Below are positions 38,299 to 64,000 of a DNA stretch of 64,000 nucleotides, piece after piece (positions within the stretch are counted from its first letter, which is position 1; the number at the start of each line of letters is the position of its first letter). Under the pieces are notes generated by a model. It had not been told where the DNA came from, did not search any database, and was given only the letters and a program-made list of their open reading frames with translations. The translations under genes were made by a program, and so were the position numbers. Location of the stretch: positions 248,001 through 312,000 of the IMG/VR virus record IMGVR_UViG_3300012931_000759. One strand, 5' to 3'.

Positions 38299-38721
38299 AT
38301 GGGCAGAAGTAGTCCCAAAAACAGGAGAGAATACAACAGGAAATACTGCCTTGAACACGGCGATGTGATCAGAGCGCAGAAAAAAGAGCATTATCTGCTC
38401 AACAAAGACAAAATCAAACAAAGCAGAAAAACCGTGCAAGGTCGATACAGCAGTTACAAAGAGAACGCCAAACGGCGCAAAGTGAAGATGGAGCTTACGT
38501 TTGAGCAGTTCGACTGTTTGACCAGCCAGCCCTGTGTGTACTGTGGTGGATGGTCGGAACTTGAACCCGCGCCATACACAGGCCTGGATCGTATCGCGAA
38601 TGATCAAGGATACACCGTGGATAACTGTGTTCCATGTTGCGAGACCCATAATATGATGCGCAAACGGCTGCCCATCATGGCATTCCTGGATGCTGTCGTT
38701 GCCGTATCTGACCGAATGTAG
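38299..38721 (+). CDS. HNH endonuclease (PCxYCG..GLDR..GY..DNCVPCC type)
   Basis: QPCVYCGG..TGLDRIANDQGYTVDNCVPCCETHNMMRK; basic N-terminus; lower GC. Confidence 0.8.
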   Translation: MGRSSPKNRREYNRKYCLEHGDVIRAQKKEHYLLNKDKIKQSRKTVQGRYSSYKENAKRRKVKMELTFEQFDCLTSQPCVYCGGWSELEPAPYTGLDRIANDQGYTVDNCVPCCETHNMMRKRLPIMAFLDAVVAVSDRM

Positions 38722-44422: not shown

Positions 44423-45357
44423 GACTCCTAGTGACTGGAAATTGTGGTTTCATCGGACAGAGTTTTGTCCGGATGTACAAGGACAAACACGAAATCGTGG
44501 GCATCGATGCGAAACTCTATGCCCACGATTGGCGGGCAGCTTTGCTTTGTCCAACTATGTTTGGGGATATAGCGGATCCTACCCATCTTGATGATCTTTT
44601 TAAGTATTATGGCCATTTTGACGCCATTGTGAATTTTGGTGCTGAGAGCCATGTGGACAACAGCATCAAGTCACCAGAACCATTCATACATAGCAACTTC
44701 ATGGGTGTGTTTCGCTTGCTTGAGTTTTCCAGGAAATACCGAGTTGGAAGGCTGGTACAGATATCTACGGACGAGGTGTACGGGGATCTGATGCCAGGCG
44801 ATCCGCCGTTCTCCAACCTCCATGAACTGAAACCTAGTTCTCCGTATTCGGCCTCCAAGGCGGCTGCCGACATGCTGGTTTTGTCGTATGGCAGGACTTA
44901 CGGAATGGATGTAGTTATAACCCGTTCATCAAATTGTTTTGGTCCATACCAATACAAAGAAAAGTTTCTCCCAGTTGTGATTCTGAACGCCCTAAGGAAC
45001 CACACAATACCAGTGTATGGAACTGGTACAAACCAACGAGAGTGGACCTATACGGATGACAACTGCCGCGGGATCATGGCCGCGCTGGAGCGCGGCAAGC
45101 CGATGGGCATCTACAACCTCGGCAGCGGGACGGAAGCCAGAAACATCGATATGGTTGGCAAGATCCTGGACATGATGGGTAAACCGCAGTCGCTTATCAA
45201 ATTCATCGAGGATAGGAAAGGTCATGACTTCAGGTACTTCCTCGACTCATCATTGGCGGCAGCTGAACTTGGATGGCAAGCCTCGACACCGCTGGACTAC
45301 GGTCTACAGCAAACGATCGACTGGTTCGCCGCGAATCCGACATATTGGGATGCCTAA
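44419..45357 (+). CDS. rmlB: dTDP-glucose 4,6-dehydratase
   Basis: GNCGFIG, AESHVDNSI, QISTDEVYG, SPYSASKA, DRKGHDFRY. Confidence 0.95.
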   Translation: MRLLVTGNCGFIGQSFVRMYKDKHEIVGIDAKLYAHDWRAALLCPTMFGDIADPTHLDDLFKYYGHFDAIVNFGAESHVDNSIKSPEPFIHSNFMGVFRLLEFSRKYRVGRLVQISTDEVYGDLMPGDPPFSNLHELKPSSPYSASKAAADMLVLSYGRTYGMDVVITRSSNCFGPYQYKEKFLPVVILNALRNHTIPVYGTGTNQREWTYTDDNCRGIMAALERGKPMGIYNLGSGTEARNIDMVGKILDMMGKPQSLIKFIEDRKGHDFRYFLDSSLAAAELGWQASTPLDYGLQQTIDWFAANPTYWDA

Positions 45358-46481
45358 TGGAAAATACAGGCGCAAGATACTATGTGTACGAGCTTACCGA
45401 TCCAAGGGATGGATCCATATTCTATGTCGGTAAAGGCAGCGGCAGGAGGATTCACATACATGCGCTCTCCGTGAAAAGACAGGACAGTAGGTACAAAAGG
45501 CATAATCCAAAGCTATTCAATAAGATATCGTCGATACTCTCCGATGGGGAAACTGTTGTAGAGATGATTGTTAGACGCTTTCATGACGAGGATGAAGCCT
45601 ATGTCTTCGAGACTAGAAGGATATTAGATATTGGTCTCAACAATCTCTGTAATATCCTTCCTGGAGGCAAAGGTGGTCCTTCTGGAGATGACAATCCCTC
45701 AAAAAGACCAGAATTTAGGGAATTTATGCGTTCACTATGGAAGAACGAAGCATATAGATGCCAAATTACCGAGGCTTTGAGCAGGTTTTGGAATGATCCG
45801 GACAATAAAAAAATGATGTCCGAAAGGCTCAAAGCGATATGGACAGAGGAAATGAGATTGGCGTGGAGTGCGGCAATGTCAGCTATGTGGGATCGTCTCC
45901 CGGAGAGAAGAGCTGAATTAGCCATCCGAATGAGAGAAAACAATCCCTCACAGACCGATGAGGTCCGGCGCAAATTAAGCATAGCATGGACGGACGACAG
46001 GCGTGAAAAGTTCAGGGCAAAGATATCCGGTCTACACCATCGCTCAAAGACGCCGGAGACCAGGGCAAAAATAAAAGCTTCCTGGACAGAGCAGAAGAGG
46101 CGCAACTTGTCGGAGAGGATCAGGGCAACATGGACAGAGGAGAGGCGGGCTGCGCTCGGTAACAGGTTTCGCGGAACAACTGGTCCTAAAAGGAAAATCT
46201 CTGTCAATGATTCCTTAAGAATAAAGGATATGTATGCCTCTGGTATAAGCAGGAAAATCCTAGCATCCACATTTGACGTTAGCGTAACCACAATACATAA
46301 AGTCATACATGGCAATTTCACAGACAAACCCTCGCGGATTTCAATAGATGCGTCAAATATCGGCGCCATACAAGAGATGAGAGAAAATGGAGCCTCGTAT
46401 AGGGAAATAGCCTTGGAATTCGGCACAAGTGTAGGAGCGGTAAGAAATTTCCTCAAACGTCATTTTGGAGGCATAATATGA
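45357..46481 (+). CDS. GIY-YIG (LEM-3-like) free-standing homing endonuclease with W-T-x-E helical repeats
   Basis: YYVYELTDPRDGSIFYVGKG; repeated WT(E/D)xxR units; two C-terminal HTH-like segments; AT-rich. Confidence 0.85.
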   Translation: MENTGARYYVYELTDPRDGSIFYVGKGSGRRIHIHALSVKRQDSRYKRHNPKLFNKISSILSDGETVVEMIVRRFHDEDEAYVFETRRILDIGLNNLCNILPGGKGGPSGDDNPSKRPEFREFMRSLWKNEAYRCQITEALSRFWNDPDNKKMMSERLKAIWTEEMRLAWSAAMSAMWDRLPERRAELAIRMRENNPSQTDEVRRKLSIAWTDDRREKFRAKISGLHHRSKTPETRAKIKASWTEQKRRNLSERIRATWTEERRAALGNRFRGTTGPKRKISVNDSLRIKDMYASGISRKILASTFDVSVTTIHKVIHGNFTDKPSRISIDASNIGAIQEMRENGASYREIALEFGTSVGAVRNFLKRHFGGII

Positions 46482-51447: not shown

Positions 51448-52343
51448 TGAGGAAAATCCTTGTTTGCGGTTCAGCTGGATTTCTGATGTCGAACATGATG
51501 CGGTACATGTTATATCGCACAAAGGATTACGAGTTCGCCAGCATCGACCCATTGCGGAACAAGGAGGACCAGCGCAATATCTACATGCACAAGAGGCATT
51601 CATTCCATGTGGGTGATGTCGGCAATCCCGAACTTCTGGATAGGGTAGTACGCATCGAGAATCCGGACATTGTGGTTATAGGTACCGGAACGCCGCAACC
51701 TATTTACTCTAATGGTGCGGCTGTCGAGGATATTGTTCTCCCGACAGCCTCTGTATGCGACCTTTCCAAGATCTACGGCTTCCGTGTTGTGCGGCTAGTA
51801 CCAGATGTGGATATTACAGATATGGGTAGCAGATCCCTGTGGAATCATGTCGAGACCATGGTGTTTGATGTGAGGGGCACAGTTTTACGTATGCCAGTAT
51901 GTTTTGGAAGGAGGGGTCGTGGCTTGTTCGAACAGGCGTTGTGTACAATCCTCTCAGGGCATGCTTGTTCAGGATGGAAACTAGATACTAGGAAAAGATG
52001 GTACGCCTATGCAGAGGATGTGGCTTCTATGCTCTGGTTTATTATGGAGAATCCAACTGTGCGCATTCCTGGACCACCTCCGATCCCAAACATAGTCAGG
52101 ATGCCAGCCCTTGGATGCGCCAATACAGCGGATATGATTGCTATGGCGCATCCTGTGTTGGGGTGGGGACAACCCTTTACATATAATATATATATGGGAA
52201 AGGAAGAGCCAATATTACCAGGCTGGATGCCAGACTCTAAAGATCTTATTGATGCTGTTTTAAAAACAGCAAAATGGTATACAATGAATAAGTGGATTTT
52301 TGATACAGAAGGCTACATATCCCCTCTATCCGGAGGACGTTAA
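51447..52343 (+). CDS. Degenerate NAD-dependent epimerase/dehydratase (RmlB-like fold)
   Basis: KILVCGSAGFL, FHVGDVGN, KRWYAYAEDVA; the catalytic YxxxK motif is not found. Confidence 0.65.
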   Translation: MRKILVCGSAGFLMSNMMRYMLYRTKDYEFASIDPLRNKEDQRNIYMHKRHSFHVGDVGNPELLDRVVRIENPDIVVIGTGTPQPIYSNGAAVEDIVLPTASVCDLSKIYGFRVVRLVPDVDITDMGSRSLWNHVETMVFDVRGTVLRMPVCFGRRGRGLFEQALCTILSGHACSGWKLDTRKRWYAYAEDVASMLWFIMENPTVRIPGPPPIPNIVRMPALGCANTADMIAMAHPVLGWGQPFTYNIYMGKEEPILPGWMPDSKDLIDAVLKTAKWYTMNKWIFDTEGYISPLSGGR

Positions 52344-52395
52344 AGAAATATCCGCGTGCGCGAGCACTGTCAAGCGGAAAATGGAGAATACCAAG

Positions 52396-53790
52396 ATGAC
52401 CGAGGAAAAAACGAATCACGTCGTTGTGGAGGAAAGCACACGACCCGGCGCCCAGGCCGATGATGAATTGGAGCGCCACCTTGCGGAGCCCCCGCTGGAT
52501 CCGGCAGTCCTGGAGCGTCTTCGCGCCAAGCAAAACACAGCAAAGGAGGCTACTGTACCGGCACCTGTGGTGCCGACGAAAACGGACCGTAGCCTGAACT
52601 TTGGAGTCGTCGGCCTAGGACAGGCCGGCTCCAGGATTGCTGAGGCTTTCCATGATCTCGGATACGATGCCTGCGTTATCAACACAGCAACGCAGGACCT
52701 GGAATTCATCGGTATGCCCGAGAACAGGAAACTATTTCTGCCCTTCGCTCTTGGAGGTGCGGGTAAGGAACTCGACAACGGGCGGCAGGCCGTCGAGCAG
52801 AATGCCGAGGCTATCATGACCAAACTACACGCGATGTTTGGTGACAAGAATCAGATGATGCTGCTTGCCGTCAGTGGCGGCGGCGGCACTGGGAGCGGCG
52901 GTGCTGAGGCCATCATTGGGCTCATGAGTACGCTTGGTAAACCAGTTGGTGTGATCTACGTTCTACCCATGGACACCGAAGATTCACTAACAAAGCATAA
53001 TGCCGTCACGACATTGGGTAGGCTGGCCAAAATGACTAGCGCCGACACAATCTCTACTTTGATCGTGGTCGACAATGCGAAGATCGAACTACTGTACCCA
53101 GGATTGAGCAAGGCGGCCTTCTGGCCAGCAGCTAATCGGGCGATCGTTGAGCCACTTCATCTGTTCAACAGTCTGTCGGCTATGGCTACGCCGTACGATA
53201 GTCTAGATTCGATGGACTTCGGACGTATCTTCACGGCTGGCGACTGTCTGATCTACGGGATGATGGAGGTTCCAAACTACAGGGAGACAACCGCCATCGC
53301 CGAGGCTGTCATGAGCCAACTTGAAGGAAGTCTCTTGGCGGGGGATTTCAATTTGAAAGAGGCTAGATTCGGCGGACTTCTTGTAGTAGGAAGCCCGCAG
53401 TCAATGGCAAGTTTGCCAGCGGAAAACATCCATTACGCGGCCCATATGGTGAGTGAGGCCTGCGATTATGCGCAACTGACTCGTGGAGTGTATGAAATCC
53501 CAGACATTGGGGATGATGTTGTGCGCGTCTACACAATGTTTAGTGGTCTCGGACTTCCGGCGGCCAGGATCGACATCCTCAAGCAGGAGGCTGAGGACCA
53601 AATGCGGCAGATCCACGAGAAGGAGAAGACACGCGCCTCGCGGATGGAGGTTGATTACGGGGCTGGGGGCGGAACTGTTGCGAAGGCTCAGGAAATCCGC
53701 CGACTTATACAGAAGGACAAGAGTAGTTTCGGCAAGCTGACATCGAACGCCAACAGGCGTCCCGACATCATTGATCGCCGGAGGCGCTAA
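52396..53790 (+). CDS. Tubulin/FtsZ-family GTPase (phage PhuZ/TubZ-like)
   Basis: VVGLGQAGSRIA, VINTA, tubulin signature GGGGGTGSG, VVDN; basic C-terminal tail. Start at 52396 (SD GGAG) or 52381. Confidence 0.9.
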   Translation: MTEEKTNHVVVEESTRPGAQADDELERHLAEPPLDPAVLERLRAKQNTAKEATVPAPVVPTKTDRSLNFGVVGLGQAGSRIAEAFHDLGYDACVINTATQDLEFIGMPENRKLFLPFALGGAGKELDNGRQAVEQNAEAIMTKLHAMFGDKNQMMLLAVSGGGGTGSGGAEAIIGLMSTLGKPVGVIYVLPMDTEDSLTKHNAVTTLGRLAKMTSADTISTLIVVDNAKIELLYPGLSKAAFWPAANRAIVEPLHLFNSLSAMATPYDSLDSMDFGRIFTAGDCLIYGMMEVPNYRETTAIAEAVMSQLEGSLLAGDFNLKEARFGGLLVVGSPQSMASLPAENIHYAAHMVSEACDYAQLTRGVYEIPDIGDDVVRVYTMFSGLGLPAARIDILKQEAEDQMRQIHEKEKTRASRMEVDYGAGGGTVAKAQEIRRLIQKDKSSFGKLTSNANRRPDIIDRRRR

Positions 53791-56027: not shown

Positions 56028-56528
56028 ATGGACATGATCGAAACGATGCGGCGAAGTGAAGCCGTGGAGATTTCGTTGAGGAACGGCCATGTGGTGTATG
56101 GGCGTTTCCTTGGGGTTTCGGGCAAGAATCTCATCTTGTGTGATCCGGACGGGGCGGTATTATTTGTGCCGTTTGCCGAGGAGAACGTGGCCTATATTAA
56201 GGTAGTTTCGGCCGATCCCGAGATCAGCCGGATGCTCGACCGTCTGTACGGAGACCGCCCATCCCACCAGCCGGTCGAGCCGCCAGAGGCCCAACCTGGT
56301 CGGCGGCTCCAGGATGAGCTGTCGCTGCGCCGTGTAGATCCGCCCGATCCTGAGCCGGGGAGAGTTGACGTACAGCCGGTCATCCTTGGCGGACTGCCTG
56401 CCAACCGGCACGCCGCGATCGAAGAGGTCAAGGAGAGGCATCGCCACTCCAATACATTCGGGTCGAGTCAGACTGCGCCCAGGCCCGCATATAGGCCGCG
56501 CATCCAGAGGGAAGACAAGGAAGAATGA
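56028..56528 (+). CDS. Sm/LSm-fold-like protein with Pro-rich tail
   Basis: SD GGAGG; EAVEISLRNGHVVYGRFLGVSGKNLILCD resembles the Sm1 motif. Confidence 0.5.
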   Translation: MDMIETMRRSEAVEISLRNGHVVYGRFLGVSGKNLILCDPDGAVLFVPFAEENVAYIKVVSADPEISRMLDRLYGDRPSHQPVEPPEAQPGRRLQDELSLRRVDPPDPEPGRVDVQPVILGGLPANRHAAIEEVKERHRHSNTFGSSQTAPRPAYRPRIQREDKEE

Positions 56529-57205
56529 TTTCACAACGCAAGACTGAGGCCGAGAAGGCCCGCATAGTGGCGAACTGCGGCAGGTGTGGAGGGGTCGGCT
56601 GCGCGTACTGTCAGAAGTACTGTTCCTTCATAGACCGTATGTCCGAGGCGGGGATCCCGGTTGATTACTGGTTCCGCGACATGGAAAAATGGTACGGCGA
56701 CCCCGATTTCGCAGAAGAATTCAAGGTTTCCTACCTATCCAGGATAGAGGCGGCCTACGCAGATGGTCGGGTTCTCTGCCTCCTTGGGCATAGGGGCGTC
56801 GGCAAGACTATGGCGGCGTGCTCGGCACTAAAGAAGGCTATCCTCTCCGGGTATTCGGCGCATTACACGTCGCTTGTCGACGCCGTTGATTTCCTCGTCT
56901 CCGGAGACGCCCACGACTACCGGCAGCTCCTGAAGTCTGTAGATTTCCTGGTGATGGACGAGGTTGACCAGCGGTTCTTTGACCACGTCAACAGCCGCGC
57001 GCTGTATGGGAACCAGTTCGAGTATATTCTTAGGACCAGGACGCAGAACCGGCTTCCGATGATTATGTGCTCGAACTCTGAACGGGTTGAGGACATCTTT
57101 TTCAACGACCAGGCGCAGGCGTCTTTTGTGTCCCTTGGGACACAGTTCTTCGCAACAATGCGCGTGGGTGGCCGGGATGCCAGACCCAAGGAGGGTGGGC
57201 AATGA
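56525..57205 (+). CDS. DnaC/IstB-like AAA+ ATPase (helicase loader)
   Basis: N-terminal CGRCGGVGC; Walker A GHRGVGKT; Walker B FLVMDEV; adjacent to DnaB. Confidence 0.85.
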   Translation: MISQRKTEAEKARIVANCGRCGGVGCAYCQKYCSFIDRMSEAGIPVDYWFRDMEKWYGDPDFAEEFKVSYLSRIEAAYADGRVLCLLGHRGVGKTMAACSALKKAILSGYSAHYTSLVDAVDFLVSGDAHDYRQLLKSVDFLVMDEVDQRFFDHVNSRALYGNQFEYILRTRTQNRLPMIMCSNSERVEDIFFNDQAQASFVSLGTQFFATMRVGGRDARPKEGGQ

Positions 57206-58608
57206 GCGAGATTTCGCTGGACCTGAGGATGCTGGCGTACGCTCTTTCTGACAAAAGGATCCTCCTTGCCATGGCGACCACTGTGCGTGGAGAGCACTTC
57301 AATCCGGAATTTCGGGTACTGTGGGAGTTGGTCTCCAGGTGCTTTGCGAAGTACAAGGACATCCCCACGGCCAACGTACTTGAACATGTTGCCGACCTGG
57401 CGTGGGAGCAGCTAGTCGAGACATACCGCCGGGTTCTTGAGGCTATTCCATTGATCGACAGGCGGGAATATCCGGTCGACCTGGAGAAACTCAAGGCAAG
57501 GGCAAACGACAATATTCTCCGTAGGATGGGACAGCACGTCTACCAGAAGAACTGGAATGGACACGGGTTCGATAACCTACATGAGGCGAACAAGGCGTTA
57601 CGTGAAACGGTCTCTAAGCTGGATCAGCTGTACAAGACGGAATCCTACAAGGAAGGCTCTTTGGCAGGGACTGCCTCCGAGGCCTGGGGTAAGTACCAGC
57701 GCACGAAACGTGATCCGGCCTCTGCCGCCGGGATTCATCTTGGATTTGCCGAGTTCGATCGCATCACTAACGGGATCAGGGAAGGCGAGCTTCTGCTCAT
57801 TGGCGGCGAGTCCGGCACGGGCAAGTCGGCGCTCTCGATGAACATGGCTGTCAACGCGTGGCTTGGGGCCAACAAGGTGCCGACCGATCCGGACGCGGAT
57901 CCTAAAAACTTCGCTCCCGGCCGTGCGGTGGTGTACTTCTCGATCGAGATGCCCTACGAAGCCCTTGAGAGGCGGCTCCACGCGTGCGTTGCAGGGGTGC
58001 CACTTTACGGCATACGTGACGGCACGCTAGATGTAGCAGAGGAGGCCCGCTACCTGGCCGCCCTTCGGTTTATACAAAAGTACCCGCACCAGTTCCACAT
58101 CATCGACATACCGCGCGGCGCGACCATGCGGTACATCGAGACCAAGTACCTGGAGCTATGCCAAGACAATACCGATGATCCCATCCATCTGTCTGTGGTC
58201 GATTACCTGAACCTGATGTCCATGGACGGCGAGGATGAGGGCGGCCCTGATTGGCTAAAAATCGGGAAACTGGGCGAGCAAGCGCATGAGTTCACCCGCG
58301 TCCATGGTACGCCCATGATCTCTCCGGTTCAACTAAACCGCCCGCCCAAGGAGGAGGCAGCAAGGGCCGCGAGGCCGGATCAGGATCGGATAGCGCGCAG
58401 CCTGATGCTGGTCCAGAACGCTAATATGGTTCTAAACATCGAGAAGCGCAAGGATGAGCATTTGACAAAAGACATGAGAGTTCACATAGTGAAGATGCGC
58501 GACGGCGAACAGGGCCTTTTCACCCTACAGAAGAGGCTGGATGCCATGCGGCTGTTCGATGACCCCACGGACTGGACACCCGGATCGTATGAGGCTGGAA
58601 ACAATTAG
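57202..58608 (+). CDS. dnaB: Replicative DNA helicase
   Basis: GGESGTGKS, FSIEMP, VVDYLNLM, SPVQLNR, VKMRDGE. Confidence 0.92.
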   Translation: MSEISLDLRMLAYALSDKRILLAMATTVRGEHFNPEFRVLWELVSRCFAKYKDIPTANVLEHVADLAWEQLVETYRRVLEAIPLIDRREYPVDLEKLKARANDNILRRMGQHVYQKNWNGHGFDNLHEANKALRETVSKLDQLYKTESYKEGSLAGTASEAWGKYQRTKRDPASAAGIHLGFAEFDRITNGIREGELLLIGGESGTGKSALSMNMAVNAWLGANKVPTDPDADPKNFAPGRAVVYFSIEMPYEALERRLHACVAGVPLYGIRDGTLDVAEEARYLAALRFIQKYPHQFHIIDIPRGATMRYIETKYLELCQDNTDDPIHLSVVDYLNLMSMDGEDEGGPDWLKIGKLGEQAHEFTRVHGTPMISPVQLNRPPKEEAARAARPDQDRIARSLMLVQNANMVLNIEKRKDEHLTKDMRVHIVKMRDGEQGLFTLQKRLDAMRLFDDPTDWTPGSYEAGNN

Positions 58609-58623
58609 GCGGGGAAAAAGGCC

Positions 58624-58911
58624 ATGCCGATATATGACTACATTTGCGAGGAATGCGGCCACGTCTTCGAGGAGTTTGCGCGTATCACGGATCCTCCGAT
58701 TAATAAATGTCCGGCCTGCGGCCTAACGGGACGCGTATGTCGCCTAATCTCGAGCGGCACAGTTGGCACAGTAGAGATGAACGGTCGGGAGTACTTCAAT
58801 CGTGTCTTAGAACCGGAGGCCAAGCGGATCGCCGAGAAGATTAAGCACGGGGATGATGCCGCAATCGCTGATGTTTTTGGCGAGGGCCCTCCTGCAAAAA
58901 AAGTCGGTTGA
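58624..58911 (+). CDS. FmdB-family zinc-ribbon protein
   Basis: MPIYDYICEECGHVFE..CPACG..RLIS. Confidence 0.9.
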   Translation: MPIYDYICEECGHVFEEFARITDPPINKCPACGLTGRVCRLISSGTVGTVEMNGREYFNRVLEPEAKRIAEKIKHGDDAAIADVFGEGPPAKKVG

Positions 58912-58936
58912 ATTCCGGCTGCCCTGTGCGTATAAT
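58908..58936 (+). promoter_or_regulatory. sigma70/sigmaA-type promoter for the prkA operon
   Basis: TTGAAT (58908-58913), 17-nt spacer, TATAAT (58931-58936), about 70 nt upstream of ATG 59007. Confidence 0.65.
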
Positions 58937-59006
58937 CTCTTTAAACAGGGGAAGGATTGCGTCCCGCTCCGGCCAAAGGCCGGGAAAAACCGCGAAAGGA
59001 TGGAGC

Positions 59007-62000
59007 ATGGAAGTGATCAACACCGGCAAAAAGGGCAAGAAGACCAAGGATCAGGAAGAGACGGCGGAGAACGGGGCGCTCGACCTTGTTGCCCTCATTG
59101 AGCAATGTGCGGCCGAAGAGGATCTTGAGCCATGGGAGGGCACGCTTCGCGATTATCTCCCGATGGTACAGGATGATTGTACACTGGCGGACACGGCCCA
59201 CGCAAGGCTGTGGCGCATGATTGAGACAGTCGGCATCAAGTTCGACGACAAGGATGAGCGGAAAGAGCATCCCGAGTACAGCTTTTTCACCAACGAGTTG
59301 TTCGGCATCAATGACACGCTGGCCAGCGTCATGGAATATCTCAGGGCTGCCGCAGCTGGATCCGACGTCGCCCGGCGAATCCTGCTCCTATACGGGCCCA
59401 CGAGTTCCGGTAAATCGCAGTTCGCAATCCTCCTTAAGGAGGGTCTGGAGAAGTTCTCGCGCACCAAGGCCGGGCGCATGTTTGCCCTCAAAGATTGCCC
59501 GATGCACGAGAACCCCTTGAACGCGGTGCCCAAGGCTGCGAGGGAGCAATTGAAGGCTAAGTATGGCCTCAATATTGAAGGTGACTTGTGTCCGCGCTGT
59601 GCCTACAGGCTCAAGACCGAGTTCAACGGCGACTTCATGGCTCTGCCGGTCGAGCGCGTGCTCCTGTCCGAGGCCAACCGAGTGGGTATCGGCACGTTCC
59701 AGCCGGCCGATCCCAAGTCGCAGAACCAGTCCGAGCTGACGGGCTCCGTCAACTTCGCCAAGCTGGCCGAGCTGGGCTCGGAGTCGCACCCGCTGGCTTT
59801 CGACTTCAACGGCGAGCTGAACAAGGCCAACCGCGGCATGATGGAGTTCATCGAGCTCCTGAAGGTGGACCGCAAGTTCAGGCACATCCTCCTGACGCTG
59901 GCGCAGGAGAAGCGCATCAAGGCACAGAATTTTCCGCTCATTTTCGCGGACCTAGTAGTAATCAGCCATAGCGTGTCTGGCGATATGCCTGTTCCCTATA
60001 GAGAGAATGGGTTGGTTCGATTTACCACAATGAGGCAACTGTGTGATGCCAACAACACCAACATCGAGGTTCTTGCTGCCGATGCCAATGGCAAGCCCGC
60101 ATGGACGAAAGTGAAAGGATTCTATCGTCACCAGTTCTCTGGCAAAATGGTGAAGACCGTACAGGTTGATGGTGTTGTCAACACTACTTGGCATCATTCT
60201 TTGATTGGCAAGGCGGACAATGCGCCTTTTCTGCCCGAAACGCTTCAAGATGTCCTGGCATTCAGGAATGTTCCTGAACAAACCGAACTTGGGACATTCG
60301 ATGTTCCGGTTCCCGATTCGTTGTCCTATTTACCCGTTAATACCCCAGGTATCTTGTCCACGGATTGCTGTGTTCCCGAGCAATCCTTTGCTCGTGTTAA
60401 ACCAACTGGCAACAAGAAAAGTGATGGAGAATACGGCAAATATTGGATCAAAACTCGCTACGATTCTTGTTCCGAGGAAGCGAAAGACATTGTTGCTCTT
60501 CTGTGTTGGTATGCTACAGAGGGTCATGTCTCGAATGAGCATGCGATCATTTCCCAAGCCAACCTGGAAACTCTATTTTCCCTGAAGAAGAGAGCGGAGA
60601 GGGTTTCTTCAGCCATAGGGTCTGTGTTTGATCGATCGGATGAGGAGGATCACACTAGCCGCCTTCACCTTTCGGCAAGGGTGTGGCGGGAAATTCTTGA
60701 GCACAATTGCGGAAGATATAGCGAAAACAAGCGTTTGCCAGATTTTGTGTTCAATTTGCCTCGTGAGTTGCGTGAATTCGCTTTACGAGAACTCATAAAG
60801 GGAGATGGTCAGACTATGCCATCGTTCGCATCCTGCGAGGAATATGCCAAAAAGTACTTTGCCTTCAAAACGACAAGCATTATTCTGGCAGCCCAATTCT
60901 GCTATTTGGCAAGTTCGCTTGGGTACGATTTTGGCGTACATCATGGATATACGAAAAAGGGAAAGGATTTCTTTGGCATCAATTATCGGGAACGAACGAA
61001 GCCCATACTAAGGAAAAACAGGATCGAGACCGTTGAGGTGTCCGACAGCGAAGTATTCGATATCGAATGCGTGGACAATCATTCTTTTGTGGCTGGCGTT
61101 GGCAACCTTGTTTGCCACAATACGAATGAGACCGAGTACCTCAAGTTCCTCGCCCAGAAGGAGGAGGAAGCGCTCCACGACCGCCTGTGGGTCATCAAGT
61201 TCCCCTACAACCTGCGCCTCGAGGACGAGATCAAGATCTACGAGAAGCTCATTTCCAGGGCGGCCGGGTTCCAAGGTATCCACATCGCGCCACACACCCT
61301 GCGCGTGGCGGCGATGTTCGCCATCCTGAGCAGGCTGGAGGAGTCCAAGGACCAGAAGTTCACCCTGCTGACCAAGATGCGCCTGTACAACGGCGAGAAG
61401 GTCGACGGGGCCGGCAAGGAGGACGAGAAGAGGCTGCGCGAGGCTGCCGAGCGCGAGGGCATGGACGGCATCAGCCCCCGCTACATCGTGAACCGCATCT
61501 CGGCCTGCTTCACCAAGCACGGTCGGACCTACATCACCCCGATGGACATCGTCCGCAGCATCAAGGAGGGGTTCTCCACCAACGCCAAGCTGTCGAAAGA
61601 GGACATCTCGCGGTTCGAGAACATTATCACGACGGTGATGGAGGAGTACAACAAGATCGCAACAAACGAGGTTCAGAAGGCTTTCTTCCTGAATTTCGAG
61701 CACGAGATCAAGGATCTGCTCAATAACTACATCGACAACGTTGGTGCCTATCTGGACGATGACAAGATCCAAAACCACTGGGGCGAAATGGAGGAGCCGA
61801 ACCACCGCCTCATGAGGAGTGTCGAGGAGAAAATTGGCATCACCGACGGCGGCAAGGATGCTTTCCGCCAAGAGGTGTACCGCAAGATGATCAAGAGCAA
61901 GAGCGAGACGGGCGACTACGACTACCAGAACCATCCGCGCCTGAAGGAGGCGCTACAGAAGCAGTTGTTCGAGGAGCGCAGCGACATCATCAGGCTGACG

Positions 62001-62144
62001 GTGTCCGTGCGGAATCCTGATGCCGATGCGCTCAAGCGGCTGAACGAGGTCATCAAGACCTTGAGCGAAAAATGCGGTTACACTCCGGAGAGCGCCAATG
62101 ATTTGCTGCGTTATGTCAGCAGCATATTGGCGAAAAACAGCTAG
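59007..62144 (+). CDS. prkA: PrkA/YeaG-family AAA serine kinase, intein-containing
   Basis: ILLLYGPTSSGKS, CPMHENPL, GIGTFQPADPKSQ, FNGELNKANRGMMEFIELLK, MDGISPRY; start at 59007 (SD GGAG). Confidence 0.93.
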   Translation: MEVINTGKKGKKTKDQEETAENGALDLVALIEQCAAEEDLEPWEGTLRDYLPMVQDDCTLADTAHARLWRMIETVGIKFDDKDERKEHPEYSFFTNELFGINDTLASVMEYLRAAAAGSDVARRILLLYGPTSSGKSQFAILLKEGLEKFSRTKAGRMFALKDCPMHENPLNAVPKAAREQLKAKYGLNIEGDLCPRCAYRLKTEFNGDFMALPVERVLLSEANRVGIGTFQPADPKSQNQSELTGSVNFAKLAELGSESHPLAFDFNGELNKANRGMMEFIELLKVDRKFRHILLTLAQEKRIKAQNFPLIFADLVVISHSVSGDMPVPYRENGLVRFTTMRQLCDANNTNIEVLAADANGKPAWTKVKGFYRHQFSGKMVKTVQVDGVVNTTWHHSLIGKADNAPFLPETLQDVLAFRNVPEQTELGTFDVPVPDSLSYLPVNTPGILSTDCCVPEQSFARVKPTGNKKSDGEYGKYWIKTRYDSCSEEAKDIVALLCWYATEGHVSNEHAIISQANLETLFSLKKRAERVSSAIGSVFDRSDEEDHTSRLHLSARVWREILEHNCGRYSENKRLPDFVFNLPRELREFALRELIKGDGQTMPSFASCEEYAKKYFAFKTTSIILAAQFCYLASSLGYDFGVHHGYTKKGKDFFGINYRERTKPILRKNRIETVEVSDSEVFDIECVDNHSFVAGVGNLVCHNTNETEYLKFLAQKEEEALHDRLWVIKFPYNLRLEDEIKIYEKLISRAAGFQGIHIAPHTLRVAAMFAILSRLEESKDQKFTLLTKMRLYNGEKVDGAGKEDEKRLREAAEREGMDGISPRYIVNRISACFTKHGRTYITPMDIVRSIKEGFSTNAKLSKEDISRFENIITTVMEEYNKIATNEVQKAFFLNFEHEIKDLLNNYIDNVGAYLDDDKIQNHWGEMEEPNHRLMRSVEEKIGITDGGKDAFRQEVYRKMIKSKSETGDYDYQNHPRLKEALQKQLFEERSDIIRLTVSVRNPDADALKRLNEVIKTLSEKCGYTPESANDLLRYVSSILAKNS
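59970..61121 (+). mobile_element. Intein (384 aa) with LAGLIDADG homing endonuclease in PrkA
   Basis: Exteins ..VVISH | TNETEY rejoin the conserved HTNE motif. The intein starts SVSGD and ends VFDIEC..NHSF..LVCHN. Endonuclease blocks LLCWYATEG and LRELIKGDG; lower GC than the flanks. Confidence 0.93.
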
Positions 62145-62726
62145 ATGGCCAATGAGATTTGTGCCAGATGCGGCAGACCGAGAAAAGTGGCCGAAAGAAC
62201 GCCAGATGGTCCAATTTGCCACAACTGCTACAAAAAAGAGCACATTGAGCCATGCCGGTTCTGTGGGAAACAGAAAGCAGTTGCTGCCCGAGATGATAAC
62301 GGCGCGGCCATCTGCGACAACTGTAACAAAGAACACAACAAATGTTCGTGTTACGTGTGCCATGAAGTTAGACAAGTTCGTGCGCGTGCGGAAAACGGAC
62401 AGCCACTGTGTCTTGCTTGTCATCGTTTGACTAATCTTGGACAGTTTTTCGCATCGTACAAGAGAGGAGCCAGCCTGCGCGGTCATATATTCGAACTCAC
62501 GTTGGATGAGTTTGAACAATTGGTGCGCAGGCCATGCTGGTACTGTGGACGCTACAACCGGGGAGAAATTTTCAGCGGCGTGGACAGAATCGACAGTTCA
62601 TGCGGCTATGTTCGAACCAATGTGCTACCGTGCTGCGGCGAGTGTAACCTGATGAAAGGTTCCTTGTCCAAGGACGCGTTCCTTGCTAGCATTGTGCGCA
62701 TAGCCAGACATTTGGAAAACAAATGA
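62145..62726 (+). CDS. HNH homing endonuclease with N-terminal CxxC zinc repeats
   Basis: CxxCG..G.(I/L)CxxC repeats; RPCWYCG..GVDRIDSSCGYVRTNVLPCCGECNLMK. Confidence 0.85.
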   Translation: MANEICARCGRPRKVAERTPDGPICHNCYKKEHIEPCRFCGKQKAVAARDDNGAAICDNCNKEHNKCSCYVCHEVRQVRARAENGQPLCLACHRLTNLGQFFASYKRGASLRGHIFELTLDEFEQLVRRPCWYCGRYNRGEIFSGVDRIDSSCGYVRTNVLPCCGECNLMKGSLSKDAFLASIVRIARHLENK

Positions 62727-63892
62727 ACGACTCCTACAAGGACATCTGGGAACTCCGACAGCCCGGTCGACGCGACTCAGAACGCCATAAGGTGCGTATC
62801 AGAAAGGCTATCAAGGAGAACCTACGGGAGCTGATCGCGGAGGAGAATATCATCTCCTCCGACGGCAAACGCAAGGTCAAGGTTCCGGTGCGCTACCTTG
62901 ATATGTGGCGATTTAAATTCGGTCCTAATTCTAAGTCCAAGGATGTTGGTCATGGCGAAGGTGATCCTGGCGACATCATTGCCAAGGAAGGCAAGGGGAA
63001 AGGTAATAAGGCAGGTGACCAGCCGGGTGAGGAGTTGTACGACGAGGAGGTCGAACTAGCCGAAATCGTGGACATGATGCTGGAAGACCTCGGCCTCCCA
63101 TGGTTAAAGCGGAAAGAGAATCAGGTCGAGATCGAGACAGAAGAGATGGTTTTCCACGACATCGCCGAGAAGGGTCTTCCCCCGAACGTCGACCTGAAGC
63201 GGACACTCATCGAGAACCTGAAGCGGAACTCTATCGCCGGGAAGCCCTCGTTCGGCAAGATTGTGCCGGACGATCTGCGGTACAGGGTGTGGGAGAATGT
63301 GGTAGAGAAGCACTCTAACGCATCTGTAATCCTAATCATGGACCGCTCCGGGAGCATGACGGACGATAAAAAGTATATCGTGAAGTCTTTCTTCTTCTGG
63401 ATGGTTAGTTTCCTGCGCATGAAATACGGGAATGTGGAGGTCGTCTTCATCGCGCACGACACCGAGGCCAGGGAGGTGGGGGAGGAGAACTTCTTTGCCA
63501 TCTCTGATGGGGGAGGCACGCGCATCAGTTCCGGGCTGGAGCTGGCCAAGACGATCATCGAGACTAGGTTCCCCACAAACATCTGGAATAACTACGTCTT
63601 CTCGTTCTCGGACGGCGAGAATTGGGATACGGACAACGAGCGCTGTATAGCCATGTTCAGAGAGTTACTTGGGATGTGCCAGGCGGTTGGATATGGGGAG
63701 GTGTCGTATACCGATCAGTTCTACAGCTGGTCCTCGTGGCGCGGCCACTGGTCGACCCTCCACGATGCCATTAAGGAGGCGGACGACCTAGTTGGGGAAC
63801 CGAGATTCCTACAGGCGGCAATCGTGAAGCGCGAGGACCTATACGACTGCCTGCGTCAGTTTCTGGATGTCGACGGGAAGGAGAAGCCATGA
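62723..63892 (+). CDS. yeaH: YeaH/YhbH-family vWA protein
   Basis: DSERH..KAIKENL, KVKVPVRYL..FKFG, IMDRSGSM, DGGGTRISSG, FSDGENW. Confidence 0.92.
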   Translation: MNDSYKDIWELRQPGRRDSERHKVRIRKAIKENLRELIAEENIISSDGKRKVKVPVRYLDMWRFKFGPNSKSKDVGHGEGDPGDIIAKEGKGKGNKAGDQPGEELYDEEVELAEIVDMMLEDLGLPWLKRKENQVEIETEEMVFHDIAEKGLPPNVDLKRTLIENLKRNSIAGKPSFGKIVPDDLRYRVWENVVEKHSNASVILIMDRSGSMTDDKKYIVKSFFFWMVSFLRMKYGNVEVVFIAHDTEAREVGEENFFAISDGGGTRISSGLELAKTIIETRFPTNIWNNYVFSFSDGENWDTDNERCIAMFRELLGMCQAVGYGEVSYTDQFYSWSSWRGHWSTLHDAIKEADDLVGEPRFLQAAIVKREDLYDCLRQFLDVDGKEKP

Positions 63893-64000
63893 GGGACAGT
63901 CGCATCGTTGACTTGGAGCAGCTGGCGCGCAAGAACGGGCTCGATTTTTTCCCGGTGGTATTCGAGGTCGTAAGCGAGAATACGATGAACAACGTGTGCG
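63889..64000 (+). CDS. spoVR: SpoVR/YcgB-family protein (5' end only)
   Basis: MRDSRIVDLEQLARKNGLDFFPVVFEVV matches the SpoVR N-terminus; ATGA overlap with yeaH; canonical prkA-yeaH-spoVR order. Confidence 0.8.
   Translation, partial: MRDSRIVDLEQLARKNGLDFFPVVFEVVSENTMNNVC

What the first reader, a model, noticed from the sequence alone, without database searches (positions are those of the whole stretch)
59007..64000. Complete PrkA-YeaH-SpoVR triad carried by a phage
Seen in sequence: prkA, yeaH and the start of spoVR lie in canonical order right after the DnaC/DnaB replication module, with their own promoter. Established: this triad is a conserved bacterial stress/dormancy module (E. coli yeaG-yeaH-ycgB in nitrogen starvation; B. 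subtilis prkA, yhbH, spoVR in sporulation). Inference: the phage may use it to control host dormancy, proteolysis or phosphorylation. An intein and a free-standing HNH in the operon suggest long residence in a recombining phage population rather than recent capture.
Basis: partly seen in the sequence, partly recalled or inferred. Interest (0 to 1): 0.75.

Follow-up and report, generated by a model that had tools for sequence, protein, structure and literature searches.

The report
Huge-phage PrkA-YeaH-SpoVR module with intein
A 340-kb tailed phage from a wetland metagenome carries the bacterial starvation/sporulation gene trio PrkA-YeaH-SpoVR as an old, inherited part of its genome, with an intein and a homing-nuclease gene lodged in it; similar trios were already on record in other phages, and what they do for a virus is still untested.

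Summary
prkA (59007-62144), an HNH-like gene (62145-62726), yeaH (62723-63892) and spoVR (from 63889; complete, 489 aa, just past the window) follow DnaC, DnaB and a zinc-ribbon gene. The record is a 340,392-bp virus contig with a terminase, baseplate, tubulin and 15 tRNAs.

prkA holds a 384-aa LAGLIDADG intein (59970-61121; Ser1...His-Asn/Thr+1). Removing it leaves a 661-aa PrkA.

This is neither a chimera nor a recent capture. A second assembler's 38-kb contig spans the junction without a difference. All 25 related IMG/VR loci with downstream DNA show dnaB...prkA-yeaH-spoVR. The three proteins give congruent trees in which this huge-phage clade is monophyletic, with Bacillus-type PrkA/YhbH as nearest cellular relatives.

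Phage triads are already known (Thermus phiYS40, Ralstonia RsoM2USA, PHROGs), so this is a new member of a known kind. What looks new:
- the triad is core to the clade;
- inteins recur at two sites in PrkA and two in SpoVR;
- the SpoVR model has a zincin-peptidase-like fold.

Most likely function (inferred): a portable version of the YeaG-dependent starvation proteolysis programme, feeding phage synthesis in starved hosts.

The parts
52300..53790 (+). Tubulin/FtsZ-family (PhuZ-like) gene; a marker of the phage clade that carries the triad
   Evidence: Pfam Tubulin E 3e-13, PHROG PhuZ E 9e-8. Used for an independent survey.
56525..57205 (+). DnaC-like helicase loader
   Evidence: IstB_IS21 E 9.5e-7; phrog_50 DnaC-like E 3e-14.
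57202..58608 (+). DnaB-like replicative helicase
   Evidence: DnaB_C E 5e-29; phrog_19 E 8e-52. Found upstream of prkA in all related loci.
58624..58911 (+). FmdB-family zinc-ribbon protein (95 aa)
   Evidence: Zn_ribbon_8 E 3e-15; TIGR02605 E 1e-15. Conserved between dnaB and prkA in the closer relatives.
58908..58936 (+). Sigma-70-like promoter candidate, TTGAAT-17-TATAAT, about 70 nt before the prkA start
   Evidence: Both hexamers are conserved in L003, L004 and L006 within otherwise diverged spacers. Not enriched genome-wide.
59007..62144 (+). prkA precursor gene (1045 aa), an AAA+ PrkA/YeaG-family protein interrupted by an intein
   Evidence: Walker A G-P-T-S-S-G-K-S is present. Solved homolog 9xip, E 9e-127 for the intein-free allele P0008.
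59007..59969 (+). prkA N-extein (321 aa)
   Evidence: Boundary set by alignment to intein-free alleles that are 90-92% identical.
59970..61121 (+). Intein with LAGLIDADG homing endonuclease (384 aa), inserted between His321 and Thr322 of the invariant H-T-N-E motif
   Evidence: Ser1, block-B T-x-x-H, terminal H-N and Thr+1 read from the sequence. PI-PkoII E 3e-9. Homologous inteins at the same site in L027 and L029 (45-51% identity). GC 47% against 58%.
61122..62144 (+). prkA C-extein (340 aa plus stop), including the PrkA C-terminal domain
62145..62726 (+). Free-standing HNH/endonuclease-VII-like gene (193 aa: four CxxC repeats plus a nuclease-like domain with D-R-I-D where D-H is expected); probably a mobile homing-endonuclease gene
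   Evidence: PHROG 1035 and 3118. Absent at this spot in most relatives, intact in L029, truncated in L003. At least four paralogs elsewhere in the genome.
62723..63892 (+). yeaH/yhbH (389 aa), a DUF444 vWA protein
   Evidence: PF04285 E 2.5e-91. Best NCBIfam model is spore_yhbH, 399 bits, below its 468-bit cut-off. The D-x-S-x-S motif is intact.
63889..64000 (+). Start of spoVR; the whole gene is 489 aa and ends at G000:C1:313358
   Evidence: PF04293 E 6e-111 on L001:1480-2949.

Best explanation
SHOWN. This is a genuine, contiguous operon of a roughly 340-kb tailed phage. The order is promoter-like site, prkA (with intein), an HNH-like gene, yeaH, spoVR. The triad is not a recent pick-up. It is a vertically inherited core block of a widespread clade of tubulin-encoding huge phages, always placed after dnaB. 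The intein and the HNH gene are selfish mobile elements lodged in it.

INFERRED FROM SEQUENCE. PrkA is made as a 1045-aa precursor. The intein splices itself out and restores the invariant H-T-N-E motif, giving a 661-aa AAA+ protein.

INFERRED FUNCTION. The three proteins act together as they do in bacteria. In E. coli, YeaG is required for starvation-induced, largely non-specific breakdown of cytoplasmic proteins, which supplies amino acids and ATP. I propose the phage brings its own copy of this programme so that it can turn the proteome of a nutrient-starved host into building blocks and energy for a large, slow infection.

A possible division of labour: PrkA as the AAA+ unfoldase, YeaH as a vWA adaptor, and SpoVR as a zincin-peptidase-like partner, which would resemble FtsH or YME1 with the peptidase supplied in trans.
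For: Identity and anatomy.

Phage context: baseplate wedge E 1e-45, terminase, 15 tRNAs, virus record with CheckV completeness 84%.

Continuity: a Logan contig of 38,227 bp covers window 57000-62800 with no differences at even depth. The same dnaB, zinc-ribbon, prkA junction occurs in a 305,730-bp NCBI contig and a 441,904-bp JGI contig.

Core status:
- 25 of 25 IMG/VR loci with downstream DNA have prkA-yeaH-spoVR after dnaB.
- All 22 contigs found independently through a tubulin at least 43% identical also carry prkA.
- The clade is monophyletic in PrkA (100/99), YeaH (98) and SpoVR (97), with the same inner groups.

Selfish elements: intein-free alleles 90-92% identical exist, and the clade has two intein sites in PrkA. 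The HNH gene is patchy.

Function:
- yeaG, yeaH and ycgB show strong cofitness in six bacteria (bioRxiv 10.1101/072470).
- YeaG-dependent bulk proteolysis in starvation (PMC13684143).
- PrkA is a clade III AAA+ protein like YME1 (PMC13001217).
- The SpoVR model (pLDDT 77.6) matches dozens of zincin metallopeptidase domains, Z 12.2 down to 7.
- The SpoVR alignment has invariant His97-x3-His101 on a helix.
- Relatives' SpoVR inteins sit exactly in that motif.
- The promoter hexamers are conserved.
Against: - There are no expression, biochemical or host data. The host is unknown.
- Whether PrkA has protease activity is disputed: reported for B. subtilis (PMC9512850), not detected for purified B. 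anthracis PrkA (PMC13001217).
- The zincin likeness rests on Z scores in a range where helical folds can match by chance. Foldseek gave nothing significant. The general-base Glu of H-E-x-x-H is Cys or another residue in SpoVR.
- The PrkA-YeaH complex prediction gave no verdict.
- The promoter match is no better than chance sites elsewhere in the genome.
- Strict conservation next to replication genes would also suit a role in the phage's own replication or assembly. In Thermus phage Lalka8 the triad lies between the portal gene and terL.
Confidence: 0.55

Rival explanations
1. The triad serves the phage's own cycle rather than host physiology, for example as an AAA+/vWA chaperone or maturation system for replication, nucleotide metabolism or virion assembly.
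For: It is a strictly conserved core block placed between dnaB and a sigma factor plus ribonucleotide reductase. Auxiliary host-manipulation genes are usually patchy. In Thermus phage Lalka8 the three genes lie between portal/minor head protein and TerL. AAA+/vWA pairs often act as maturation chaperones (established knowledge of the MoxR-vWA systems).
Against: The cellular homologs act in starvation and sporulation physiology. No structural-protein signal was found. The operon has a host-type promoter candidate of its own.
Confidence: 0.22
2. One reading: the triad is a signalling device (kinase or regulator) that pushes the host into or out of dormancy or sporulation.
For: PrkA and YeaH are closest to the Bacillus/Paenibacillus type (45-46% identity; best NCBIfam model spore_yhbH; sister position in the trees). 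PrkA, YhbH and SpoVR affect sporulation in Bacillus (PMC9512850, PMC13001217). The Thr and Ser of the L-T-G-S segment, which PrkC phosphorylates in B. subtilis, are kept.
Against: Kinase activity was not detected for the Bacillus proteins. The neighbouring phage sigma factor is RpoD/RpoS-like, not clearly a sporulation sigma. The clade's members come from many different JGI metagenome samples. There is no evidence that the hosts form spores.
Confidence: 0.15
3. A recently captured host gene cluster (a moron), kept only in this phage.
For: The genes are of cellular type, and phages pick up such clusters. RsoM2USA and LR756502 nest inside the proteobacterial YeaG type, which shows that separate captures do happen.
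Against: The block is conserved with the same neighbours across a deep clade (39-90% identity). The clade is monophyletic with congruent trees. The nearest cellular PrkA found is only 45-46% identical.
Confidence: 0.04
4. An assembly chimera of a phage and a bacterial chromosome at the dnaB/prkA junction.
For: None found. The only gap in coding is the 95-nt spacer at 58912-59006.
Against: A second assembler's contig spans the junction without a difference at even depth. The same junction occurs in independent assemblies from other samples. Phage-type genes continue after spoVR: YpsA-like, sigma factor, NrdJ with inteins, PhoH.
Confidence: 0.01

Closest known systems
E. coli YeaG(SpdA)-YeaH-YcgB and the proteobacterial prkA-yeaH-spoVR operon
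   Same: The same three families in the same order (seen here in Sinorhizobium, Legionella and Cupriavidus loci). They act together, as shown by cofitness. YeaG is needed for starvation-induced proteolysis.
   Different: Only 26-30% identity in PrkA. The phage YeaH is the short (about 390 aa) YhbH type. The phage copy is encoded by a virus and is interrupted by an intein and an HNH gene.
Bacillus PrkA-YhbH (plus SpoVR elsewhere in the genome)
   Same: Nearest named cellular relatives: PrkA 45-46% identity, sister group in the PrkA and YeaH trees, and best NCBIfam model spore_yhbH. Walker A and the L-T-G-S segment are conserved.
   Different: Sister support is below the star level (90/92 and 91). 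NCBIfam equivalog cut-offs are not reached. In the Bacillus locus fetched here, spoVR is not next to prkA-yhbH (I recall the same for B. subtilis); in the phage it is.
Triads in isolated phages: Thermus phiYS40/TMA/phiLo/Lalka/MN1 and Ralstonia jumbo phage RsoM2USA
   Same: Complete PrkA, YeaH-like and SpoVR genes in cultured phages.
   Different: These are different lineages. RsoM2USA has the proteobacterial type (25% identity). The Thermus phages form a separate long-branched group with the order yeaH-spoVR-prkA. None of those fetched has an intein in prkA.
Uncultured huge-phage contigs of the same clade (NCBI GCA_902730225.1, 305,730 bp; IMG/VR 3300029288_005873, 441,904 bp)
   Same: The same gene order from tubulin to ribonucleotide reductase, with 85-90% identity in PrkA.
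   Different: Their prkA has no intein. The JGI contig has no HNH gene. The NCBI contig keeps only a 110-aa remnant of it.
LAGLIDADG inteins of the PI-PkoII type
   Same: Hint splicing blocks, terminal His-Asn, a nested LAGLIDADG endonuclease, and insertion in an invariant motif of an ATPase.
   Different: Ser rather than Cys as the first residue. The host protein is PrkA. The Pfam intein model scores below its threshold.
FtsH/YME1 AAA+ zincin proteases (comparison of mechanism only)
   Same: PrkA is described as a clade III AAA+ protein like YME1. The SpoVR model resembles zincin peptidase domains.
   Different: The ATPase and the peptidase-like part are separate proteins. The catalytic Glu of H-E-x-x-H is missing. 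No membrane anchor was looked for. No activity has been shown.

Membership tests
PrkA/YeaG family | Both Pfam domains (AAA_PrkA PF08298 and PrkA C-terminal PF06798) above the gathering score | tested here: met
   338.9 and 229.8 bits against cut-offs of 25.
PrkA/YeaG family | Colinear full-length protein of about 630-690 aa with a Walker A lysine | tested here: met
   661 aa once the intein is removed. G-P-T-S-S-G-K-S starts at extein residue 130. Colinear with intein-free alleles and with solved 9xip.
PrkA/YeaG family | NCBIfam equivalog PRK15455 cut-off (576 bits) | tested here: not met
   252.6 bits for the intein-free allele P0008. It is a family member, not an equivalog of enterobacterial YeaG.
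PrkA/YeaG family | ATPase activity and a role in proteolysis | not testable with these tools
   Needs biochemistry. The published data conflict.
YeaH/YhbH (DUF444 vWA) | PF04285 above the gathering score and an intact MIDAS D-x-S-x-S | tested here: met
   307.3 bits against 27. D-R-S-G-S is present and invariant in the clade.
YeaH/YhbH (DUF444 vWA) | TIGR02877 spore_yhbH equivalog cut-off (467.95 bits) | tested here: not met
   399.2 bits. It is the best model but falls below the cut-off.
SpoVR/YcgB | PF04293 above the gathering score over the full length | tested here: met
   371.5 bits, profile positions 13-401 of 407.
prkA-yeaH-spoVR operon | Three genes adjacent, on the same strand, in this order | tested here: met
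   The only departure is the HNH gene between prkA and yeaH.
Intein (class 1, with homing endonuclease) | N-terminal Cys/Ser, block-B T-x-x-H, C-terminal His-Asn, and +1 Cys/Ser/Thr | tested here: met
   Ser1, T-T-W-H, H-N and Thr+1 read from the translation. The C-terminal block aligns to PI-PkoII.
Intein (class 1, with homing endonuclease) | Precise insertion relative to intein-free alleles of the same gene | tested here: met
   Alleles 90-92% identical read straight through ...S-H-T-N-E....
Intein (class 1, with homing endonuclease) | Pfam Intein_splicing above the gathering score | tested here: not met
   14 bits against 35.8. Homologous inteins at this site in other PrkA proteins do carry PF14890.
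Intein (class 1, with homing endonuclease) | Protein splicing and DNA cleavage activity | not testable with these tools
   Needs expression and an assay.
HNH / endonuclease VII homing endonucleases | Beta-beta-alpha-metal nuclease motif with its catalytic His | tested here: inconclusive
   PHROG 1035 and 3118 hit (E 2e-12 and 7e-11), but Pfam, NCBIfam and the PDB give nothing. The expected D-H is D-R in this protein and its homologs.
Jumbo (huge) tailed phage | Genome over 200 kb with phage hallmark genes | tested here: met
   340,392 bp; terminase, baseplate wedge, virion protein, 15 tRNAs. No tail sheath or Terminase_6C match.
Zincin metallopeptidases (for SpoVR) | Zincin fold with an H-E-x-x-H helix and a third metal ligand | tested here: inconclusive
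   Fold likeness Z 12.2 to 7 to many zincins. His97-x3-His101 lies on helix 88-107. The Glu is absent, Foldseek is not significant, and the third ligand is not identified.

The most novel reading that the evidence does not exclude
A cosmopolitan clade of tubulin-encoding huge phages carries, as a core inherited module, its own three-part ATP-dependent protein-degradation machine: PrkA as AAA+ unfoldase, YeaH as vWA adaptor, and SpoVR as a zincin-like peptidase. The phage switches it on in starved hosts to recycle the host proteome into amino acids and ATP for virion production, a virus-imposed autophagy-like programme. The inteins that recur at H|TNE in PrkA and at AH|C.GH in SpoVR mark the active sites of proteins whose biochemistry is still open.
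Probability: 0.3. Interest if true: 0.75.

Novelty: new member of a known kind. Interest (0 to 1): 0.45.

Why it matters
The PrkA-YeaH-SpoVR trio is one of the most widely conserved bacterial gene sets whose biochemistry is still unsettled. In 2026 its first member was tied to bulk protein recycling in starved E. coli.

Finding the trio as a fixed, inherited part of a whole clade of huge phages suggests that large viruses of starved environmental bacteria bring their own recycling or stress machinery. That would change how we think about infection of non-growing cells.

The phage copies also give practical handles on the problem:
- compact, diverse sequences for alignment and expression;
- natural intein insertions that point to functional motifs;
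- a testable idea that SpoVR is the peptidase-like partner of the PrkA ATPase.

Tried and rejected
- A viral-contig scan with the single YeaH protein found nothing. An alignment-based PrkA scan was needed.
- The genome-contig scan with phage-clade patterns found only two loci. One is an 8-kb 'Pacearchaeota' MAG contig that sits inside the phage clade. It therefore gave no cellular sampling, and the cellular sequences had to come from PLSDB records.
- Names for the nearest 50%-identity clusters were almost all missing, so the host or donor could not be narrowed beyond 'Bacillus-type'.
- Terminase_6C and Phage_sheath_1 gave no match. Terminase_6N did.
- No PADLOC defence family matches any of the proteins.
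- The HNH protein has no Pfam, NCBIfam or PDB sequence match.
- The PrkA (P0008 residues 46-660) plus YeaH complex prediction scored 0.00, which gives no verdict and is not evidence either way.
- A genome-wide scan showed no excess of sigma-70-like promoters. My first impression that the prkA promoter is unique holds only for one narrow pattern, and I dropped it as an argument.
- Foldseek against the PDB gave no significant match for SpoVR.
It was rerun without them.
- Literature searches found no paper on inteins in PrkA, on SpoVR as a zincin, or on the triad in huge-phage clades. The library is limited, so this is not proof that none exists.


Full report
WHAT IS THERE

The window is bases 248,001-312,000 of a single 340,392-bp IMG/VR virus record, linear, with a CheckV completeness of 84%. 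In the last 8 kb nearly every long ORF is on the + strand. The genes, in order:
- a DnaC-like loader, 56525-57205;
- DnaB, 57202-58608;
- an FmdB zinc-ribbon protein, 58624-58911;
- a 95-nt spacer;
- prkA, 59007-62144;
- an HNH-like gene, 62145-62726;
- yeaH, 62723-63892;
- the start of spoVR at 63889.

spoVR is complete just beyond the window: 489 aa, PF04293 E 6e-111. After it come a YpsA/SLOG-like gene, a 214-aa RpoD/RpoS-like sigma factor, a class II ribonucleotide reductase and a PhoH2-like helicase.

THE INTEIN

The Pfam AAA_PrkA match is split in two. The insert runs from window 59970 to 61121 (384 aa). It starts with Ser, has a T-x-x-H block B, and ends His-Asn. Thr follows it.

It matches the solved intein PI-PkoII over the LAGLIDADG endonuclease domain and the C-terminal splicing block, E 3e-9. 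Its GC is 47%, against 58% for both exteins.

Removing it joins ...V-I-S-H to T-N-E-T-E-Y..., an invariant PrkA motif. The result is a 661-aa protein colinear with intein-free alleles that are 90-92% identical.

Within this PrkA clade there are two intein sites. Site a lies at K237|S238, just before the L-T-G-S segment. Site b is the window's, at H321|T322. Some proteins carry both and reach about 1,430 aa.

THE HNH GENE

The 193-aa product has four CxxC repeats followed by a nuclease-like domain. PHROGs places it with endonuclease VII and HNH endonucleases. Pfam, NCBIfam and the PDB give nothing. The expected Asp-His is Asp-Arg, so nuclease activity is uncertain.

The gene is packed tightly: it abuts the prkA stop and overlaps the yeaH start. 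At this position relatives show three states. There is an intact 231-aa homolog in L029, a 110-aa remnant in L003, and nothing in L004 and most other loci. At least four paralogs lie elsewhere in the genome. This is the pattern of a mobile free-standing homing-endonuclease gene.

IS IT A PHAGE, AND IS THE JUNCTION REAL?

Phage hallmarks:
- a baseplate wedge protein, E 1e-45, and a tail-lysin-like giant protein;
- a virion structural protein;
- a terminase large subunit at G000:162560-163099;
- a tubulin/PhuZ-like gene;
- 15 tRNA genes.

Two wetland-metagenome runs hold the stretch. In one, a contig of 38,227 bp made by another assembler covers 57000-62800 with no difference and even depth. That run may be the source sample, so it tests the assembly, not the biology.

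Independent support comes from other samples. A 305,730-bp NCBI contig and a 441,904-bp JGI contig have the same order: tubulin, helicase, two small genes, dnaC, dnaB, zinc ribbon (a called gene in the JGI contig; a tblastn match in the NCBI contig), prkA, yeaH, spoVR, the YpsA-like gene, sigma, ribonucleotide reductase. A chimera or a bacterial chromosome is excluded.

HOW OLD IS THE TRIAD IN THIS LINEAGE?

A pattern scan of IMG/VR with a PrkA alignment gave 26 loci, many on contigs of 200-440 kb. All 25 that have downstream DNA show prkA, yeaH, spoVR in that order, with dnaB upstream.

To avoid ascertainment through PrkA, I searched again with the tubulin. All 22 contigs whose tubulin is at least 43% identical to the window's are contigs that also carry prkA. 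More distant tubulin phages (40% or less) show no dnaB or prkA within 10 kb.

Maximum-likelihood trees of PrkA, YeaH and SpoVR each recover this clade as one branch, with support 100/99, 98 and 97. The inner groups are the same in all three, so the genes have travelled together.

The nearest named cellular relatives are Bacillus and Paenibacillus PrkA (45-46% identity) and Bacillus YhbH. Their sister position has support of 90/92 and 91, below the star level. The best NCBIfam model for YeaH is spore_yhbH.

Ralstonia phage RsoM2USA and the uncultured phage LR756502 fall inside the proteobacterial YeaG type. The Thermus phages form a separate long-branched group. Phages have therefore acquired the triad more than once. 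Cellular sampling in these trees is thin, with six genomes, and this limits what can be said about the donor.

WHAT WAS ALREADY KNOWN

- Thermus phage phiYS40 is annotated with a 'conserved bacterial protein' (YeaH-like), SpoVR and a serine kinase.
- RsoM2USA ORF28-30 are SpoVR, a YeaH-like protein and PrkA.
- PHROGs has families for PrkA (22605) and YeaH (19072, 10856).
- JGI's pipeline already labels some of these proteins 'Ser/Thr protein kinase/intein/homing endonuclease'.

In the library I could search, no paper discusses the triad as a feature of a huge-phage clade, inteins in PrkA or SpoVR, or SpoVR's fold.

HOW IT MAY WORK

The facts about the cellular system:
- The three genes show strong cofitness in six bacteria.
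- B. subtilis PrkA was reported to be an ATP-dependent protease that PrkC regulates at T217/S219.
- Purified B. anthracis PrkA is a clade III AAA+ protein, YME1-like, with no detectable protease or kinase activity.
- E. coli YeaG is required for starvation-induced, largely non-specific degradation of cytoplasmic proteins, which supplies amino acids and ATP.
- A PrkA homolog has a solved structure, 9xip.

In the phage proteins the Walker A motif, the L-T-G-S segment, the H-T-N-E motif (after splicing) and the YeaH MIDAS motif are intact.

An AlphaFold model of the window's SpoVR (pLDDT 77.6) was compared with about 48,000 solved chains. It matched almost only zincin metallopeptidase catalytic domains: DUF885 at Z 12.2, and M1, M3, M32, M4 and ACE-like enzymes at Z 7-10. 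Foldseek was not significant.

The invariant pair His97-x3-His101 lies on helix 88-107, as in the zincin active-site helix. The Glu of H-E-x-x-H is not there.

In relatives, SpoVR itself carries LAGLIDADG inteins at two sites. One is exactly A-H|C-x-G-H. The other lies just before W-H-A-E-L. Inteins favour active-site motifs, which fits these being functional centres.

Putting this together, my best reading is that the phage carries a portable version of the starvation proteolysis and stress module. It is possibly an AAA+ unfoldase with a peptidase-like partner and a vWA adaptor. It would be expressed from a conserved host-type promoter candidate to feed a large infection in nutrient-poor cells. 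All of this is inference. The main rival is a role in the phage's own replication or assembly.

VERDICT

The title claim (a phage carries the complete triad) is right, but it describes a known kind. The reasoning from the intein and the HNH gene to 'long residence' is weak on its own, because this genome is full of such elements: NrdJ has two inteins, other large ORFs carry more, and the HNH gene has several paralogs. The conclusion is nevertheless borne out by synteny and phylogeny.

The added value found here is threefold: the triad's core status in the clade, the recurrent intein sites in PrkA and SpoVR, and the zincin-like model of SpoVR.

Noticed in passing
L006:11143-13848, L012:12845-15466, L015:11922-14498, L027:10222-12708, L030:10459-14346: spoVR genes of related huge phages carry LAGLIDADG inteins at two sites, inside A-H|C-x-G-H and just before W-H-A-E-L. 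L030 has both (1296 aa). Inteins in SpoVR were not mentioned in any paper I could find.
   Followed up: partly
L001:1480-2949 (window 63889 onward): The AlphaFold model of SpoVR resembles zincin metallopeptidase catalytic domains (Z up to 12.2), with invariant His97-x3-His101 on a helix but no catalytic Glu. This is a lead on the unknown biochemistry of the SpoVR/YcgB family.
   Followed up: partly
L034:2577-6983 (G000:C1:314577-318983): The class II ribonucleotide reductase (NrdJ) is 1468 aa and holds two LAGLIDADG inteins; the relative L004 has a 774-aa intein-free gene. Further LAGLIDADG domains lie in large ORFs near G000 112 kb, 151 kb and 165-167 kb.
   Followed up: partly
window 38299-38721; G000:C1:10529-11098, 63796-64014, 86891-87133: Paralogs of the HNH-like protein (35-44% identity) are scattered through the genome, forming a multi-copy family of free-standing nuclease-like genes.
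   Followed up: no
L001:2961-3521 and L034:1923-2567: Directly after spoVR come a YpsA/SLOG-like protein and a short (214 aa) RpoD/RpoS-like sigma factor. Both are conserved at this place in the closer relatives, so they may belong to the same functional block.
   Followed up: partly
L044 (Thermus phage Lalka8) 2516-6731; L002; L045: In Thermus phages the order is yeaH-like, spoVR-like, prkA-like. In Lalka8 the three lie between portal/minor head protein and TerL, which hints at a role linked to head assembly in that lineage.
   Followed up: no
L031 (NZCX01000035.1); proteins P0006, P0096, P0133: Contigs labelled as Pacearchaeota, Patescibacteria or Gammaproteobacteria MAGs carry triad genes. 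L031 falls inside the huge-phage clade in the trees; the others are close PrkA homologs (P0096 on a 246,754-bp contig) but were not placed in a tree. They are probably mis-binned phage DNA.
   Followed up: partly
window 61122 (run X3, record 20): A freshwater-metagenome contig about 97% identical covers 61122-62292 and stops matching exactly at the intein/C-extein boundary, with 92 more letters that do not match. This suggests a close relative with no intein, or a different one, at this site. The HNH gene is present in that relative.
   Followed up: no
window 58969-58983: A small hairpin (CCGGCC-AAA-GGCCGG) lies in the prkA leader between the promoter-like site and the ribosome-binding site. 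A similar GC-rich inverted repeat is present in L003.
   Followed up: no
G000:C1:1-165: The contig begins with 5.5 copies of a 30-bp tandem repeat (94% match). It could be a terminal repeat or an assembly end effect.
   Followed up: no
G000:C1:55850-78217: A cluster of 14 tRNA genes, with a 15th at 234178. Two are read as tRNA-His with anticodon ATG, which is unusual and may be a mis-call.
   Followed up: no
window 45273-46481: A 402-aa ORF matches homing-endonuclease and DNA-invertase/HTH PHROGs in a low-GC stretch (48-50%). It is another likely mobile element.
   Followed up: no
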